Shown here: piece by piece, positions 6,172 to 53,890 of the stretch
Layout of the letters: each line of letters begins with the position of its first letter
Numbering within the stretch: position 1 is the first letter of the stretch
Assembly (NCBI GenBank): GCA_964247055.1
Contig: OZ176051.1
Location: 8,246,001 to 8,310,000 of the forward strand
Direction of reading: 5' to 3'
Length of the DNA stretch: 64,000 bases
DNA from: Paragordius varius
Taxonomy: Eukaryota; Animalia; Nematomorpha
Notes under the pieces: generated by a model
Databases searched by the model: none
Seen by the model: the letters and a program-made list of their open reading frames with translations, nothing else
Told to the model about the DNA's origin: nothing
Program-made: the position numbers and the translations under genes

Positions 6172-9100
6172 ATGAGTAGTGATGCAGTCGCTACCAATCT
6201 TTTGGCTGAAAAAGTTGCATGCTGGAAGTCTAAAAACAATAAATGTCTCGCTCCACTTTCAGCACAAGAGTTTGACACTGTACAATTATTAAAAAAATTT
6301 TTACATGAAGAAATAAAAATTAAAACGCCAGATAAACTAAGCACAAATAATATTGATATACCTTATGAAGATCTTGATCCATCACTCAAAGCCCTAAAGT
6401 ATTTTTTTTCTTACCAAAGAATATACCAGGAAAATCTAAAACTGTTTAAAGTAAACACATTAAATCCTTTGCTGGATCAAATTGTTGAATTAACCAAACA
6501 AAGCGAACAAATTAGAAATGATTACGGAAAAGTGACGTCAATCATCAACTCTTTGCATGCTGAGAGCGAATCGATAAAGAAAGAAAAAGTACACATTATT
6601 TTTTGATTCATTAGGAAACATATCAAACCAAATTGCAATATATTGATCGGACCGTATCTTTATTTGATAGAATCGATAGTTTATATGAAGTATTTTACCA
6701 TTTTTTCGATTAATCTCTAAGCAATTTTGCCTGCATAATTATACCAAATATAATAATATTATGTATACTTTCTAAATTTTGTTTTAATATTTTTCAATCT
6801 AGTTCATTTTCGCTCATACAATTTTACATCCAAACTTTTTTTAAAAAAAATAAATTATATTGGTGCTTTTCCTTAAATAGAAAATGACATAGTTTTATTT
6901 TAATAGTTTACTATTTAGATAATAATTTTTAAATTAGGTTTTATTTAATATAATATTGCACGGATTTAAAGATTTTCTGATTTTGACTTATTAGAAAAAT
7001 GTTTCAATATCTTTTTAAACTTCTTAAAACTCATATTCTTAAGTTCTAATTGATAAATGTTTAAGAATTTTACCAAAATTTTTGTGTCCAATCTAGTGTT
7101 TTAGTTATTTTATTTTTGTTTTAGGTTAAGGTAAAATGAAATATATTGCGTAGTCAAAATTAAGTTCAATGAAAAGTAAATTTAGAATTAAAAATTGATG
7201 GGGTCAGGGAAACGTCTGCGTTTTAGGTTTTTTAAAATATATTTAATGCCAAATGTTGAAGATTATTGAAAAAATATTGGACTTCTGAAAAGTATGACTT
7301 TTTTAAAAAAAACTGGTACTGAAGGAAAAAGTTGCATAGTAATAACTTTAGTATTAGATCTAATAAAGGATAGAAAACTGCTTGAAAAAATTTTATGTGG
7401 AAGCGAAAACTTTTGGTTAGAATGAAAATAATTTCAAAGTATGGACCTGGTGTCATTTATAAAAAGTGCTTTTAATCCTCTTAATCTCGTTTTATAATGT
7501 GTTAAAGAAGGCAAAAGTGTTGAATTCAAATAAAATATTAAAATTTAATAATAATATGAGATGAAAGAAGTATTAAATAATAGACTGAAGGTTGAAAAAA
7601 ACCATGGTAAAAAAAGGTGCTAATTTTAAAATTTTTTGACAATTTTGGCAACAAACTCGCCCAATGAAATAACCACAAAATTAAATTCAATAGTAAACGA
7701 TAAATATTCTAAAACTCTTTTATAATTCCAATATACTTTGTTTTTAATAATCACAATGTAATTATACTTTATAATATAATAATTATATGTAACATTTCTC
7801 TAACCTCGTTATAATCCAACAAACAATATACAGAGATTTGTTACAAGTGAAAGTAAACTACCATTGGGCTTTGATACGTGTTTACATGTAATCCATCAAC
7901 TTGATGAAGATATCCTGTATTTACAAGCTCATGTAAGGCCTAATAAAATTAATTTTTTGTTTTATAATCATAAAAATATTTCAAATAATTAGATTTTTTA
8001 GTAGTTTTTTAATATTTTATGAAAAAATATATGTAATTACATTTACCACAGTTTAATTGGCATTATTTCACTTTTTGAAACGATTATATCAATATATTTT
8101 TGTGATTTTATTAAAATATATCGGTTTTTGCCTTTTTATTTTCCCTGTGTTGGCAATTTTTTATTTGCACATTTTAAATCTTTTAATTACTATAGCCGAA
8201 TTTCAAAGATTGTCCCATATATTTGGCTAAGGCATGGAATTTGGTACATAAAATGATATCAGAAACCCAGGCCAAAGTAATTGGTGTAATTGATATCGCT
8301 TTTACAGCTTTAGAGGCCGGAACTCAAACAGTTAATCCAAACTTGCCAAATCTATCTACAAATGTAATTTTATCTCTCAATATTCAATTTTATCAAAGTG
8401 GTGAAAAGACCGTAAAAATGTATATTTTAAAGATAAAATTTTAATATACGAAAGATTGAAAATTTTCATATGTACTCTGAGATGTTTTTATATAACGTTA
8501 TAATAATTAGTAAACTTGTCCAACATGAAATTGAGTATCTTACTATTTTACACTTCTAATCCTTATTTAGGACCCAAAATGATAGGTTATTTTAAAAAAT
8601 CAAGGTTCAAAAAATAATGATCACAATGAACACACTTTTATGTCCGATTTTCATAACTTTATTTACTGTATATAACTAACACCTTATTATACCTATTAGA
8701 CCTGCCATATAAATTAAGCAGCTTTTAAAACTATTGTGCAAATAGCGACAAAACACTTTTAAAATAAAATCAGCCGTAATGCTTAAAATTTTAATAATAT
8801 AATGAAAATTTTAATCTAGGTCTATACTTTGATTGAATTATTCCATAAAAAATATATAATTATCAATAAATTTCCATTTTATTCAAAAATTGCCTTTTTA
8901 AAGTTATGAATATTGCTGTTATTGTAAAACATTGAATAATAAAACCATTTTTTAAATATGCTATCTACCTACAACCATTTCTAATGCTTTTTATAAAATA
9001 TCAAATATAATAATTTAAATTTGAGCTGTACATTATATAATCATTAGAAACGTTGTCAAAAAATGTTTGATAAGGGGGGACATTTTTGTAGATATATTGA

Positions 9101-17500: not shown

Positions 17501-19392
17501 AAGTAAGGAAGTCTATTTGTTCTGATAAAAGCTATTATTGTTTCTAGTTGATATATGGTGGTATTTATCTTCATATGTTTTAGCATTCTGTTTTTCGTTT
17601 TTTTAATCTCGATTTTAATGAGTAATGACATAATTTTCACTGGCATATGTATAAAAGGGTAGGGCAGACACCCTCTTTATATATAATAATTTTATTTTTT
17701 TACGGTTATGTCTTTATTTGTTAATACATCTGATTTTACAGAGCTCCCCACAAGTCCATGAAAAGCACATTGATTCCAAAAAGGTTGTAGATGACGTGTT
17801 ACGGACCATGTGTCAAGAATTCATAAGACTTGGAACACGTTATATGGTTGGATCTCTGCAAGATTTTTTAGCTTCCAAAGTAATTTGGATAAAAATAGAA
17901 AAATATTATTGTGCATTTTTTTATGTCCTAAATAATTTGTCATTCTTTTTAGGCTAAATTAATGCTGGATCAAAATGCACGATCGGACTTACATAATCTT
18001 AATCCTACCAATGAATTAGAAAAGAATGATGTATTAACAATAAACTCGCATTCCAATAATTTTCAATCTCAAAGCAATGACGTTTCAACGGAAACCCTTT
18101 TACCCATTGCCGTTGATTTAGCAAAAAATGTGGCTTCATTCTATAGAACATTAAAGGACACAACCAAATTTTTGAAGAAAAGTTTAAATCTATACCTTGC
18201 AAATCCTGACACCGAATATATTTTGTTTAAACCCCTAAAAGTATATGTAACTCATTATATGTTTAATATCATTTTCATTTGCAGAAAAAATTACTCTTAA
18301 TCGCGGGGATTTAATTATAGCAATTGCTAAAAACAAATTATTTTATTGTTATCTTTATAAATAAGGTATTTTCATGACCTTAGCATTGCTGCCTAATCCC
18401 AAATTTTATTTAGCCTAATACATTATTTATATTAAAATTTACATCCTTATGTATTAGATCAATGCACAATCTGCATTTAACGATTTGAGAGATTTCGTTG
18501 ATCATTACTATAAAAATGACGAAGATTCCGCTATAATAAATTGTCCGACTCAGGAACAGGTAAATTTGTTTTTGGTGAATAAATTTATTTTATCACAGTT
18601 TTTATTATACATCTCCAGCGTTTATAAGTTAATAAGTTCCTGTTGGTTATTATGTATTTTTCCGTTTTTTAAATCAGTTAGTTTTTGAGATATGTAAAAA
18701 TTGAAATCCTCTTTGAACGATAAAAATCCATAGTATAATATTATATATACCATAAATGTTATTATATTTTTATCAAAAATGGGTTTTCCTTCATTCGTGG
18801 TCATTTATAGATGGTTTAAATGTACCATTTGCACTTCAATGTCCTTTAACACTTTAAGTTGGTCCTTTACCATTTCAAGTTGGTCCTTGAACACTTCAAG
18901 TTGGTCTTTGAACACTTCATGTTGGTCCTTAAAATTTTTTTGATTTAACCATAATTTTTTTTAATTTTTATTTTATTATTTATAAACCCAATTTCTTTAT
19001 TTATTATATATTTATTTAAATAATAAAAATTTTCTTCAAAAACCTTTTTTTGTTTCATAGTAATTTTTTAATTTAACAAAATATTTTTAATTACATGTTA
19101 AAATCTCATAAATATCTAAAATAATTGTAAGAAGTTAATAAAGATATACGGTTTCTCAATGATTAAAAGTTGATAAAATAGGTTTAAAACGAAATATATG
19201 ATTGATATACGATTTAATTGATAAAAGTAAAAAGCAAAACAAAAATGACAAGGGACCTTGAAATGTTCAAGTACCAACTTGAAGTGTTTAATATTATATA
19301 CAATATATATATATATATATATATATTGTATATATATATATATATAAATTTAGCTTACAATGTTATTTGCTGGACAAATTGATATCACTTAA
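6172..19392 (+). CDS. COG3: Conserved oligomeric Golgi complex subunit 3 (Sec34), 19 coding exons, ~995 aa
   Basis: Exons: 6172-6588, 6615-6689, 7834-7932, 8196-8363, 9477-9683, 9970-10085, 10180-10306, 10612-10706, 10770-10964, 12349-12610, 13605-13785, 14138-14322, 16651-16740, 17017-17137, 17227-17309, 17742-17879, 17953-18240, 18458-18559, 19354-19392. All introns are GT-AG, phases are consistent and the sum is 2988 nt. COG3-like motifs: [117 protein letters not shown]. The last exon ([12 protein letters not shown]) is the least certain. Confidence 0.93.
6589..6614 (+). other. 26-nt GT-AG intron (COG3 intron 1)
   Basis: Sequence gtacacattattttttgattcattag. Removing it joins ...[12 protein letters not shown] to [18 protein letters not shown]..., gap-free against recalled COG3 (LHEACEQLLKEQSELVDLAENIQQKLSYF). 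Retaining it gives an in-frame TGA at 6604-6606. Confidence 0.85.
10983..11269. mobile_element. MITE family A with extra subrepeats, followed by (TA)n
   Basis: Repeated aaattcacccttgaa units on the left; gagggtaaattttaactgtaaatgg on the right. Confidence 0.75.
11270..11326. repeat. (TA)n microsatellite
   Basis: Direct reading. Similar runs occur at ~12248-12272, 14528-14553, 19305-19345, 26318-26361, 29498-29520, 29907-29929 and 60575-60602. Confidence 0.95.
11405..11628. mobile_element. MITE family B (near-palindromic hairpin)
   Basis: tgcattttaaaggttgcttatttcacactatagttg pairs with caactatagtgtgaataagcaatcattaaaattgca. It matches copies at 28890, 43136, 45262 and 57952. Confidence 0.8.
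17400..17560 (-). pseudogene. Decayed LINE 3' relic in a COG3 intron
   Basis: The peptide [30 protein letters not shown] resembles the LINE C-terminal IxxxRLRWxGHVxR....KKIL. Confidence 0.45.
18825..19292. mobile_element. MITE related to family A, in the last COG3 intron
   Basis: It starts ccatttgcacttcaa, then tandem ~21-bp units cttgaacacttcaagttggtc. An inverted remnant, gtaccaacttgaagtgttta, sits at ~19271-19290 next to (TA)n. Confidence 0.55.
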
Positions 19393-19863
19393 TTTTTATT
19401 CAATTTTATCTCCAAAGTATTTGTTAATGGGTTTTCATACAGGGCAATATATAGAAAATTTACTGTATACTGCGCATACACCTCACAACTCATATGTGAT
19501 TATTATTTATTATATTAATTTAATACTTAAAAATAAATTGGGATATAAACATAAATAAACACATCTTAACATGGCAACGAATTGGCAAATTATATACATA
19601 TTTAATTTTAGATCCTTCTTTTTAAGACCGTATTGATTTACATATTAAATTATTTTTTGTTGTAAATAAGGCGACAATCATAGCTAATATTAATTACAAT
19701 CTGTACCGCACGACATTGACCCAATAACCGAATATTGTTTTTACCTTAAAACGTGTTTTATTCGTTTTTATTTTATTATACATGATGACATTTTACACGT
19801 GCGTCTGATTTGAGGATTTTATATCTTTGAGTAGGTATACATTGCAGTTATGGAAAATGCTGG

Positions 19864-20240
19864 CTTTGTGATCTGTTTCCGGAAAACCGGTAGACCCATT
19901 CAAATCCAAATGTCGAAAAAAATATCATAGATGAATGCACCGACAATAGCTTTGCCCTTTTTTTGAATTCCCCCAGTTCGGGCCCACCCCGTGTAAAAAA
20001 CGGTTTTTTTGAAAACAGAAGTCCACAAAACCGTGTCTTTGACACAATTTTCCGGAGAACGTGTTGGATCATTCAATTTCAAATATGATTGTTTACTTAT
20101 TTTCGATTGCGCCGAACATATCGTCTCACTTTTTTAATTTAGGCCCTCTTTTTATCCGCTCCTCCCGTAAAACGTCATTTCAAAAAACAAAGTCCAAAAT
20201 ATTTTTTTGAATCTATTTAAAAGGCAAAAATTTTAGTCAA
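19864..20240. repeat. Truncated second copy of the 1499 repeat, between COG3 and SWEET
   Basis: It shares ctttgtgatctgtttccggaaaacc, ccccagttcgggcccacccc and ttttcgattgcgccgaacata with the first copy, and stops at aaggcaaaaattttagtcaa. Confidence 0.8.
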
Positions 20241-20799
20241 CCATGCCAAACCGGTCTAACACGAATGGCGAATCGCGTAGACAAGAAGACAGTGGTCTGT
20301 GAATTTTTTTAGAGTATTTAATTTTAAACAGGCCTGGAGCATTAAACGATCTCGAAGGACTTAAATGAATGTGTTGTATCTAACTGCTAAATAACATTAG
20401 ATTTTGCCTCAAAAAGTTTTTAAAAAAGCTTATTATGTTACACATTCTAACTTTTTCTTTTATAATGGTATCTTTTTGAAAATTTTTTAAGAGTTTGGTC
20501 TATTTGAATATTTTAGAATCAAGCTCATTATCTCTTATTCCTAATATATATACGTAAAAATTTAAAAGGTAATTCTCAACAGCCAATCTAAAAGATAACT
20601 ATTTTGCGTTTATTTTTATATTTATAATAAAATCTAAAAAATTTGGTCAATCTAAAGAATATAAAATTATTATTTCTTTTGTACGAAATGTATATATTTT
20701 TACCTATAATATGGTCAGGCATGTAATTTATCAGACCATATTGGATATTAACATCCATACAAACATCTGTTTAAACAGGGAATTTTAAAATAAATTTTT

Positions 20800-21904
20800 A
20801 TGCAAGAAATATTAGCATTATTTTGCACAATATTCACTTTGGGATTGTTTGTTTGCGGATTGTAATTTTATACTATATTATTAGCCCATCCTGTTACAAC
20901 ATAATAAAGAAAAAATCTGTTCAAGGCGCCCCGTTTGAAATATATTTGTTAACATTATTGACGTATCCATAATTTTTATTATAGAAATATTTCATCCATA
21001 TATTACGGCATTCTAATAAATGATAATCTCATATTACGCATTAATATCATTGGATTAACCATACAATCATTTTATATTTTAGTTTTTTTATACTATACAA
21101 AAGCCAAGGTATCTTAAAATGTAATTAACATAAATAGGTACCATGCTTAAGTCTATTGCTTAGCGTTATAATGTTTTTATTGCTACCAATATATGCGTAC
21201 CTTAATTTTTATGTCATGTTTGAAAGCGAAAGGATAATAAAAATGGGCTACATTGGAACCGTCATTGGTATTTGTGCCATGTTTGGTCCAGTAAAAGGAT
21301 TGGTAAAAATATGATTGATTTTTATCTATTTATTTAAAAAAATAAATCATTTTTCCACAAAATTAAATTTAGTTACATTGTATTAACTTTAAAACGGCGG
21401 AAAACATTTCACTTCCAATCATATATGGGGCTTTAGCTTGCGGACTGAGTTGGACTCTATATGGTCTTTACCTGGCAAACATTTTTATAATGGTAATCTA
21501 TTTTAATTTATCGTTTACTATAAAATTTATATTTTTAAAAATAAAAGTAGGCTTTATTTTATTATTAAAAGTGTATTCTTAAATCTTAATTTAATTTTAA
21601 CCCATCATGTGGCTTGTAAAATAAAAAAATTGGTAATAAACTTAATATGTATTTAACAAATATGGGTTATTTAAAAATTATAAACATAGTTTTTGAAAAA
21701 TGTTATACTTTTTTTACGTTTTTTGTTTATATAAAATTATTAATGTACGATAATATAATTACAATGTTTTTGCTACAACTATTTTTTTTATTTTAGCTAC
21801 CCAATGTGCTTGGAATATTCATAAACTTAATTTGCGTTTATTATGGCCTAAAATATAGTACATGCCCTAATGAAAAATCAACAAAAAAATCAAAAGCTAA
21901 TTAA
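20800..21904 (+). CDS. SLC50A1: SWEET1-like sugar transporter (MtN3/saliva family), 6 exons, 218 aa
   Basis: Exons: 20800-20861, 20885-20962, 20985-21108, 21138-21302, 21373-21492, 21797-21904 (657 nt). Translation: MQEILALFCTIFTLGLFVCGF PSCYNIIKKKSVQGAPFEIYLLTLLT NISSIYYGILINDNLILRINIIGLTIQSFYILVFLYYTKAK VPCLSLLLSVIMFLLLPIYAYLNFYVMFESERIIKMGYIGTVIGICAMFGPVKGL LHCINFKTAENISLPIIYGALACGLSWTLYGLYLANIFIM LPNVLGIFINLICVYYGLKYSTCPNEKSTKKSKAN*. It shows a 7-TM pattern with two MtN3 repeats (INxxG, SWxLYG, PNxLG motifs). Confidence 0.92.
20862..20884 (+). other. 23-nt GT-AG intron (SWEET intron 1, phase 2)
   Basis: Sequence gtaattttatactatattattag. Removal restores the SWEET frame; retention gives an immediate TAA. 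Confidence 0.87.
20963..20984 (+). other. 22-nt GT-AG intron (SWEET intron 2, phase 2)
   Basis: Sequence gtatccataatttttattatag. Removal restores the frame into NISSIYYG; retention gives TAA. Confidence 0.87.
21109..21137 (+). other. 29-nt GT-AG intron (SWEET intron 3, phase 0)
   Basis: Sequence gtatcttaaaatgtaattaacataaatag. Removal restores the frame; retention reads GTA TCT TAA. Confidence 0.85.
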
Positions 21905-22529
21905 TTGTGTGTTGATCGAAAATAACAAAGCCTCTCAAAAATGCATTTTATCGAATCTCATTTTTTTATGCAATGATTTTTGACAATGGATTTTTATACG
22001 TAACCATTTTTAACTAGTCAAAACAAAATAAATTGGCATTATATATGCGTATCCATTTATTATTACAATATATAGATATACGATAAAATAAGTAGAAGTA
22101 GAGTAAGAATTCTTTTGGTTGTATGATGTGGTTTTTACACATAATTTTATTTCAAAAAAGTAATATTGTAAATATAATTAATAATCCAATTATGTATTCA
22201 CAATGTTTTTTTTGTAAAGATGACAGGGATATAAACAGAACGATAATAGGGTTGTTGAGATTGTTGAACTAAAAATAATCACCATCGTAAATTTTAACAT
22301 AGATGCTTGTCTTTCAATTATGCGCCATAATATTTTTTGTCAAAATGTAAACATGTTAAAAAATATTTTTTCTTGGGGCCAAAAATGATATGTTTTTTTA
22401 TCATTCGTAATATTTTTTGATTCCTAAAATAGATTTTTGCATACATATTTGTGTGCGTGTGTCGTGTTTGATGTTGTCGTAGGTATAAAAAATTGTTTAT
22501 ACATTACAAACAAAATCATCATTAATGTT

Positions 22530-53890
<31,361 letters not shown>

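What the first reader, a model, noticed from the sequence alone, without database searches (positions are those of the whole stretch)
20800..21302. Three consecutive ultra-short introns (23, 22 and 29 nt) in an intact SWEET transporter gene
Seen in sequence: removing three GT-AG segments of 23, 22 and 29 nt gives an uninterrupted 218-aa SWEET with both MtN3 repeats, while retaining any one gives a stop within a few codons. The ORF track misses the gene for this reason. Established knowledge: introns this short are below the minimum usually cited for animal spliceosomes and are best known from ciliates, nucleomorphs, microsporidia and dicyemids. Inference: the positions and phases (2, 2, 0, 0, 0) appear to match vertebrate SLC50A1 as I recall it, so these look like ancestral introns shrunk to a minimum, not new insertions.
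Basis: partly seen in the sequence, partly recalled or inferred. Interest (0 to 1): 0.92.

Follow-up and report, generated by a model that had tools for sequence, protein, structure and literature searches.

The report
Three tiny introns in a SWEET gene
A sugar-transporter (SWEET/SLC50A1) gene of this AT-rich animal reads as a normal protein only if segments of 23, 22 and 29 bases are cut out. These lie exactly where fish, scorpion and priapulid genes have introns of 73 to 5,964 bases, so they look like real, extremely shrunken introns, though I could not show the cutting in RNA.

Summary
Removing 20862-20884 (23 nt), 20963-20984 (22 nt), 21109-21137 (29 nt), 21303-21372 (70 nt) and 21493-21796 (304 nt) gives a 218-codon open frame with intron phases 2,2,0,0,0.

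- **Identity:** the product is a SWEET/SLC50 transporter. Exon pieces hit Pfam MtN3_slv in order in both repeats. The spliced model scores 133 bits against a profile of 12 animal SWEETs, the best of the 27 open-frame splice combinations tested.
- **Interpretation:** supported and extended. All five introns sit in the same alignment column and phase as in trout, Arapaima, a scorpion and a priapulid. Inner exons are 78/124/165/120 nt here and 78/124/162/120 nt there. A plant SWEET shares three or four of the positions. These are ancestral introns that shrank.
- **Not shown:** the splicing itself.
- **Context:** the held literature (Mol Biol Evol, Sept 2026) reports animal introns under 30 nt only in myxobolid myxozoans and Dicyema. 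Here they share a gene with 70- and 304-nt introns and lie near a gene with a 2.6-kb intron.
- **Earlier notes:** this scan has already noted the same intron class many times elsewhere in this genome, which those notes call a hairworm relative. This is one more case, and a particularly clean one.

The parts
20800..20861 (+). Exon 1 (62 nt, starts at the ATG; TM1)
   Evidence: It aligns to the TM1 region of animal SWEETs without a gap.
20862..20884 (+). Micro-intron 1: 23 nt, phase 2, GTAATT...TATTAG, 13% GC
   Evidence: Same column and phase as introns of 78-5,964 nt in the scorpion, trout, Arapaima and priapulid genes, and in a beetle and a plant. Retention gives a stop after 1.3 codons.
20885..20962 (+). 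Exon 2 (78 nt)
   Evidence: Hits Pfam MtN3_slv profile positions 21-44. It is exactly 78 nt in all four compared six-exon animal genes.
20963..20984 (+). Micro-intron 2: 22 nt, phase 2, GTATCC...TTATAG, 18% GC
   Evidence: The orthologous introns are 73-1,241 nt. The Pfam match runs on across the junction, from profile 44 to 50 with 5 residues between.
20985..21108 (+). Exon 3 (124 nt)
   Evidence: Pfam MtN3_slv, E 9.4e-08, 32.4 bits, profile 50-86 of 87. It is exactly 124 nt in the four compared animal genes.
21109..21137 (+). Micro-intron 3: 29 nt, phase 0, GTATCT...AAATAG, 17% GC
   Evidence: The orthologous introns are 166-5,379 nt. Retention gives a stop after 3 codons.
21138..21302 (+). 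Exon 4 (165 nt; TM4 and the start of repeat 2)
   Evidence: The orthologues have 162 nt, so this exon has one extra codon.
21303..21372 (+). Intron 4: 70 nt, phase 0, GTAAAA...ATTTAG
   Evidence: Same column and phase as in all compared genes with this intron, the plant included.
21373..21492 (+). Exon 5 (120 nt)
   Evidence: Pfam MtN3_slv profile 26-62, E 5e-4. It is 120 nt in all compared genes.
21493..21796 (+). Intron 5: 304 nt, phase 0, GTAATC...TTTTAG
   Evidence: The position is shared with all compared genes.
21797..21904 (+). Exon 6 (TM7, C-terminus, stop at 21902-21904). An AATAAA lies at 22027.

Best explanation
This is an intact six-exon orthologue of animal SWEET1/SLC50A1, a seven-helix sugar uniporter. 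Its first three introns have shrunk to 23, 22 and 29 nt, and the last two are 70 and 304 nt.

The three short segments are ordinary U2-type GT-AG spliceosomal introns, recognised across the intron. Each has a minimal 5' signal (GTA followed by A or T), an A/T-rich body with candidate branch adenosines 6-12 nt before the end, and a TAG 3' end. If one is not removed, a stop follows within about 3 codons, so an unspliced message could not yield a full-length protein.

Shown here: the anatomy, the family, and the identity of intron positions with other animal phyla. Inferred: the removal from RNA and the splicing signals used.
For: - **Model:** open frame of 218 codons, phases 2,2,0,0,0.
- **Family:** exon pieces hit MtN3_slv in order, repeat 1 at profile 21-44 then 50-86 and repeat 2 at 26-62. 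An exhaustive search with exon 3 returns SWEET proteins. The spliced model aligns to them with no gap at any of the three junctions.
- **Intron positions:** all five coincide in column and phase with Priapulus, Oncorhynchus, Arapaima and Centruroides. Inner exon sizes are 78/124/162/120 nt there against 78/124/165/120 nt here.
- **Best splice choice:** of the 27 combinations tested (the three shortest ORF-keeping choices per junction) the 23/22/29 model scores highest against a profile of 12 animal SWEETs. It scores 133.0 bits, the next 124.6, and the others fall to 74.9.
- **Composition:** exons are 23-36% GC and all five introns 13-18%.
- **Fold:** seven hydrophobic stretches in a 3+1+3 layout.
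- **Uniform signals:** all five introns, short and long, start GTA(A/T) and end TAG.
Against: - There is no RNA evidence.
- No protein over 44% identical to exon 3 exists among 1.84 billion cluster representatives, so no transcript-derived copy could be found.
- The protein is more divergent than its orthologues are from each other: 23-27% identity against 29-39%.
- The first-repeat tryptophan of the sugar pocket is a serine here. Some relaxation of function cannot be excluded.
- For each junction, longer introns (35-59 nt) that keep the frame open do exist.
Confidence: 0.85

Rival explanations
1. The gene is spliced at more distant donors, giving introns of 35-59 nt (for example 20847-20884, 20948-20984 or 21082-21137). 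That would be within the range usual for small-intron animals.
For:: each junction has two or more longer GT/GC-AG options that use the same acceptor and keep the frame open.
Against: - Each longer option removes 2-12 residues that align to conserved helix residues and costs 8-30 bits against the family profile.
- It would break the exact 78- and 124-nt exon sizes shared with four other animal genes.
- The alternative donors (GTTTGT, GTTAAC, GTTTTT, GCCAAG) lack the GTA(A/T) start that all five proposed introns share.
Confidence: 0.05
2. The gene is a young pseudogene. Deletions inside three introns left stumps too short to splice, and the exons have not yet decayed.
For: The protein is unusually divergent and has lost the first-repeat pocket tryptophan. 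No transcript-derived copy was found.
Against: - Three independent deletions would each have had to keep both splice sites and land in the narrow 22-29 nt range.
- The 218-codon frame is fully open across six exons, with chance probability 2.4e-9.
- The four helix prolines, both asparagines and the second tryptophan are kept.
- A 26-nt GT-AG segment also interrupts the first long ORF of the gene upstream in this window. Earlier notes report the same size class in many housekeeping genes, but those are leads, not evidence.
Confidence: 0.06
3. The short segments are an assembly artefact: longer introns collapsed or mis-polished.
For: Nothing positive. I could not lay raw reads.
Against: - A collapse would not leave clean GT...AG units that restore the frame three times and give exon sizes identical to the orthologues.
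- Runs X1 and X2 hold 74-75% of the sampled 31-letter words of 19500-23000, though I could not see which ones.
Confidence: 0.02
4. The segments are removed by something other than the major spliceosome, either as U12-type introns or by excision at the DNA level.
For: Intron 2 starts GTATCC and intron 3 holds TTAAC 9 nt before its end, faint echoes of the U12 signals.
Against: - Neither intron has the full U12 donor or branch box.
- The orthologous introns in four animals are plain U2-type, with GTAAGT or GTRAGT donors and a pyrimidine tract.
- The long introns 4 and 5 of the same gene have the same GTA(A/T)...TAG ends.
- GT-AG ends are not the mark of any known DNA excision system (my knowledge).
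Confidence: 0.02

Closest known systems
Ultra-short introns of myxobolid Myxozoa (Henneguya salminicola, Thelohanellus kitauei, Myxobolus) and of Dicyema japonicum (PMC13644364, Mol Biol Evol 2026)
   Same: - GT-AG introns of about 20-30 nt in animals, at positions conserved with other animals.
- Splice signals reduced to little more than GTA...AG, with a few A residues before the 3' end.
- Short introns tend to sit next to other short introns.
   Different: - In those genomes the short size is the median of all introns, in small parasite genomes. Here three micro-introns share a gene with 70- and 304-nt introns.
- The neighbouring Groucho gene has a 2,610-nt intron, and the window carries an intact LINE ORF.
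- The micro-introns are the 5'-most three of five.
- The paper's text names no nematomorph or other ecdysozoan with such introns.
Animal SWEET1 / SLC50A1 (RAG1AP1) genes, e.g. Oncorhynchus mykiss, Arapaima gigas, Centruroides sculpturatus, Priapulus caudatus
   Same: - Length of about 218-233 aa, two MtN3 repeats and seven helices.
- Six coding exons with identical intron positions and phases.
- Inner exons of 78, 124, 162-165 and 120 nt.
   Different: - Introns 1-3 are 22-29 nt here against 73-5,964 nt there.
- Identity is only 23-27%.
- Ser replaces the first-repeat pocket Trp, and 'GP' replaces 'SP' in helix 5.
Short introns of ciliates (Paramecium about 25 nt, Stentor 15-16 nt) and the Bigelowiella nucleomorph (18-21 nt)
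   Same: The size range is similar, and retention leads at once to a stop or frameshift. This comparison rests on my knowledge. Stentor is mentioned in PMC13644364.
   Different: Those are unicellular eukaryotes in which nearly all introns are of one short size. This is an animal genome with two size classes.

Membership tests
SWEET / SLC50 (Pfam MtN3_slv, PF03083) | Two MtN3/saliva repeats detectable by the family profile, in order | tested here: met
   repeat 1 is hit by exon 2 (profile 21-44, E 1.2e-3) and exon 3 (profile 50-86, E 9.4e-08, above the gathering score). Repeat 2 is hit by exon 5 (profile 26-62, E 5e-4, just under gathering for a 40-aa piece). The whole spliced protein could not be handed to Pfam because it has no reference. 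A local profile of 12 animal SWEETs gives 133 bits, E 1.6e-41.
SWEET / SLC50 (Pfam MtN3_slv, PF03083) | Seven transmembrane helices in a 3+1+3 arrangement, about 220 aa | tested here: met
   hydrophobic stretches near residues 3-25, 38-58, 62-85, 90-116, 122-145, 154-175 and 180-202 of 218 aa. This is a hydropathy scan only, with no structure prediction.
SWEET / SLC50 (Pfam MtN3_slv, PF03083) | Conserved helix prolines and the Asn/Trp pairs of the sugar pocket | tested here: inconclusive
   the prolines of helices 1, 2, 5 and 6, both Asn and the second-repeat Trp are present. The first-repeat Trp is Ser (residue 51). The roles of these residues are from my knowledge of plant SWEET structures.
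SWEET / SLC50 (Pfam MtN3_slv, PF03083) | Sugar transport activity | not testable with these tools
   This needs expression and an uptake or sensor assay.
Orthologue of animal SWEET1/SLC50A1 | Shared exon-intron structure (five introns, phases 2,2,0,0,0) | tested here: met
   same columns and phases as in Priapulus, Oncorhynchus, Arapaima and Centruroides.
Ultra-short (<30 nt) spliceosomal introns | GT-AG ends, length under 30 nt, and removal needed for the reading frame | tested here: met
Ultra-short (<30 nt) spliceosomal introns | Position identical to an intron in orthologues | tested here: met
   for all three.
Ultra-short (<30 nt) spliceosomal introns | Absent from mature mRNA | not tested
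No transcript-derived protein is in the protein collections.
Ultra-short (<30 nt) spliceosomal introns | Recognisable branch point | tested here: inconclusive
   A residues lie 6-12 nt before each AG (TACTATA in intron 1, TTAAC in intron 3). In 13-18% GC sequence this is expected by chance.
U12-type (minor spliceosome) introns | RTATCCTT donor and TCCTTAAC branch box | tested here: not met
   only partial matches (GTATCCAT, GTATCTTA, TTAAC); the orthologous introns are U2-type.

The most novel reading that the evidence does not exclude
This animal, which earlier notes call a hairworm relative, runs a two-class intron system. A discrete class of 22-32 nt introns, concentrated at the 5' ends of genes, would be spliced beside ordinary and kilobase introns in a large, repeat-rich genome. 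That would make it a third, independent animal origin of introns under 30 nt and the first outside compact parasite genomes. Gene finders and read aligners with the usual minimum intron sizes would then hide many genes, so part of the gene loss reported for the phylum could be an annotation artefact.
Probability: 0.5. Interest if true: 0.85.

Novelty: new variant of a known kind. Interest (0 to 1): 0.72.

Why it matters
- **A third lineage.** A paper of September 2026 states that animal introns under 30 nt are known only from myxobolid myxozoans and a dicyemid, both with small genomes in which short introns are the rule. Here three such introns sit in one gene beside introns of 70 and 304 nt, in a window that also holds a 2.6-kb intron and a LINE. 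Genome compaction therefore cannot be the whole explanation.
- **A clean history.** Each micro-intron stands at a position shared with fish, scorpion and priapulid, and intron 1 also with a plant. The gene documents shrinkage of ancient introns by up to about 200-fold.
- **A practical cost.** The gene is invisible to ORF scans, and no copy of its protein was found in two very large protein collections. Annotations of such genomes probably under-count genes.
- **A usable test case.** It offers a natural substrate for asking how a metazoan spliceosome places U1 and U2 on 22 nt.

Tried and rejected
1. **Reads.** Later whole-window work was local scripting only.
2. **Whole-protein searches.** The spliced 218-aa protein has no reference and I did not type it. 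Whole-protein Pfam, structure prediction, fold search and exact-sequence look-ups were therefore left out. I used exon pieces and local HMMs instead.
3. **Exon 4 search.** The search for homologous proteins with exon 4 (55 aa) found nothing.
4. **Closer relatives.** The profile search A1 found named animal and plant SWEETs but no close relative. I could not date the shrinkage or measure selection.
5. **Unbiased screen.** A whole-window screen for GT-AG segments of 15-79 nt that bridge open frames gave a flat length histogram. At 26% GC the background is too high for it to count micro-introns.
6. **Upstream gene.** The two exon pieces that flank the 26-nt segment gave no hit to any COG3 family in Pfam.
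7. **U12 idea.** Rejected.
8. **Rfam and tRNA scans.** Nothing in the window.
9. **Literature.** Searches for hairworm genomes with intron data found no statement on intron size. The Gordionus genome preprint never uses the word intron.
10. **Organism.** I did not identify it myself. 'Hairworm relative' comes from earlier notes.

Full report
**What is there.** The sequence at 20800-21904 on the + strand was rebuilt by script.
- Six exons: 20800-20861, 20885-20962, 20985-21108, 21138-21302, 21373-21492 and 21797-21904.
- Five GT-AG introns of 23, 22, 29, 70 and 304 nt, in phases 2,2,0,0,0.
- Together they give a 218-codon open frame. The mechanical ORF list shows nothing longer than 52 aa in this region.
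- Keeping any of the first three introns gives a stop 1.3, 3.3 or 3.0 codons past the junction.
- The window is 25.7% G+C, and stops are frequent at 0.087 per codon. A 218-codon open frame has a chance probability of 2.4e-9. Only one of 9,581 stop-to-stop runs in the window is that long, and it is the LINE ORF.
- Exons are 23-36% G+C and all five introns 13-18%.
- An AATAAA lies 123 nt after the stop.

- Exon 2 matches Pfam MtN3_slv at profile positions 21-44. Exon 3 matches at 50-86 (E 9.4e-08, above the gathering score). Exon 5 matches at 26-62 of the second repeat.
- The matches are in order. Across micro-intron 2 they continue, from profile 44 to 50 with 5 residues between.
- An exhaustive HMMER search of 1.84 billion representatives with the 41 residues of exon 3 returned SWEET proteins of 218-228 aa.
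- A profile search then gave named SWEET1 proteins of scorpion, priapulid, mosquito, beetle and fishes, and plant SWEETs.
- Built locally from the window file, the spliced model aligns to these over its whole length with no gap at any of the three junctions.
- It scores 133 bits (E 1.6e-41) against a profile of 12 animal SWEETs.
- It has seven hydrophobic stretches in the 3+1+3 layout.
- It is more divergent than the others are among themselves, at 23-27% against 29-39% identity. It has Ser where the first-repeat pocket Trp stands.

**Are the short segments the real introns?** For each junction I listed every GT/GC-AG pair that keeps the frame open.
- Longer options of 35-59 nt exist. They use the same acceptors with upstream donors.
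- Among the 27 combinations tested (the three shortest ORF-keeping choices per junction), the 23/22/29 model scores best. Each longer choice costs 8-30 bits.

The stronger test is gene structure. I fetched the genomic loci of six SWEET genes and solved their exons by exact translation.
- Priapulus, Oncorhynchus, Arapaima and Centruroides all have introns in the same five alignment columns and phases as the window gene.
- Their inner exons are 78, 124, 162 and 120 nt, against 78, 124, 165 and 120 nt here.
- Their introns at the three positions measure 73-5,964 nt.
- Leptinotarsa keeps three of the positions.
- The plant Corchorus shares three exactly, including that of micro-intron 1, and a fourth within two columns.
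- The orthologous introns are plain U2-type, with GTAAGT-like donors and pyrimidine tracts.

These are ancient introns that shrank, not insertions.

**Context.**
- The neighbouring Groucho/TLE gene on the other strand has two N-terminal-domain exons, 43437-43366 and 40755-40669. They are contiguous in the Pfam profile (62-82, 83-107), so the intron between them is 2,610 nt.
- An intact 751-aa reverse-transcriptase ORF lies at 45595-47850. This is not a compact genome.
- The first long ORF of the upstream gene is interrupted at 6589-6614 by a 26-nt GT-AG segment, after which the frame runs on. A first-stage note calls that gene COG3.
- Earlier notes of this scan report the same 20-32 nt class in many genes of this genome, mostly at gene 5' ends, and call the organism a hairworm relative. 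I treated these as leads.
- What I can confirm is the arrangement in this one gene: introns 1-3 are tiny and introns 4-5 are not.
- The window's G+C agrees with the published Gordionus montsenyensis assembly (26.93% G+C, 63.8% repeats). That is circumstantial, and that paper says nothing about introns.

**What is known.** Hadjez et al., Mol Biol Evol 2026 (PMC13644364), make these points:
- Introns under about 30 nt were thought absent from animals.
- They occur in myxobolid myxozoans (medians 22-27 nt) and in Dicyema japonicum.
- No other of 51 animal genomes examined showed them.
- Splice signals there are reduced to GTa...AG, with a few A residues before the 3' end.
- Short introns neighbour short introns.

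The three introns here fit that description. They start GTA(A/T), end TAG, and have A residues 6-12 nt upstream. The setting differs, because the two size classes occur in one gene of a repeat-rich genome.

**How it probably works (inferred).** The major spliceosome recognises each unit across the intron. U1 pairs with a minimal GTA(A/T) donor, and U2 pairs with an adenosine a few bases before the TAG. There is no separate pyrimidine tract, because the whole intron is A/T.

In a 22-nt intron nearly every base would be part of a signal. That may explain the narrow 22-29 nt range. The immediate stops on retention would make unspliced messages untranslatable, and probably targets of decay. A U12 reading was considered because of GTATCC and TTAAC motifs, and was rejected.

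**What I could not do.**
- There is therefore no RNA evidence and no raw-read check of the assembly.
- No close relative's SWEET and no transcript-derived copy is in the protein collections. Selection could not be measured.

**Verdict.**
- Observation: confirmed.
- Interpretation: supported.
- Splicing: strongly implied by comparative anatomy but not shown.
- Novelty: the kind, ultra-short spliceosomal introns, is known. Their occurrence in this lineage and genomic setting is not in the held literature. This scan has already met the class repeatedly elsewhere in the same genome.

Noticed in passing
window 6589-6614 (+): A 26-nt GT-AG segment (GTACAC...CATTAG, phase 0) ends the 139-codon first exon of the upstream gene, which a first-stage note calls COG3. 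The frame continues for 25 codons to a GTATTT donor at 6690. Pfam gave no COG3 family hit on the two pieces, so the gene name is unconfirmed.
   Followed up: partly
window 26024-43437 (-): A Groucho/TLE gene. TLE_N exons at 43437-43366 and 40755-40669 are contiguous in the Pfam profile, so the intron between them is 2,610 nt. A WD40 exon lies at 26024-26314. Kilobase introns thus coexist with the micro-introns about 5 kb away.
   Followed up: partly
window 45595-47850 (-): An uninterrupted 751-aa ORF with a reverse-transcriptase domain (RVT_1, E 4e-40). It looks like a young non-LTR retrotransposon.
   Followed up: partly
window 18820-18930 and about 19245-19290; (TA)n at about 19300-19345: Tandem copies of a motif of about 22 nt have an inverted partner some 350 nt downstream, like the ends of a small foldback or MITE-type element in the last intron or 3' region of the upstream gene. 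The stretch 18947-18986 between them was not examined further.
   Followed up: no
runs X4 and X5, for window 19500-23000: These two runs of unknown kind hold 21-22% of the sampled words. That is about the fraction expected if only exon-internal words of the SWEET mRNA were present, but it is also what DNA about 5% diverged would give. They are worth laying first.
   Followed up: no
spliced SWEET model, residue 51 (codon in exon 3, about 20995-20997) and residues 138-139: Ser stands where animal SWEETs have the first-repeat pocket Trp, and 'GP' where they have 'SP' in helix 5. The second-repeat Trp and both Asn are kept.
   Followed up: no
L006 (Corchorus SWEET) against the animal loci L001-L005: A plant SWEET gene shares three intron positions and phases exactly with the animal genes, and a fourth within two alignment columns. 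Most of this gene structure therefore predates the plant-animal split.
   Followed up: partly
window 19840-20360: A stretch clearly richer in G+C than its surroundings lies between the upstream gene and the SWEET gene, with short ORFs on both strands. It is possibly a repeat-element fragment.
   Followed up: no
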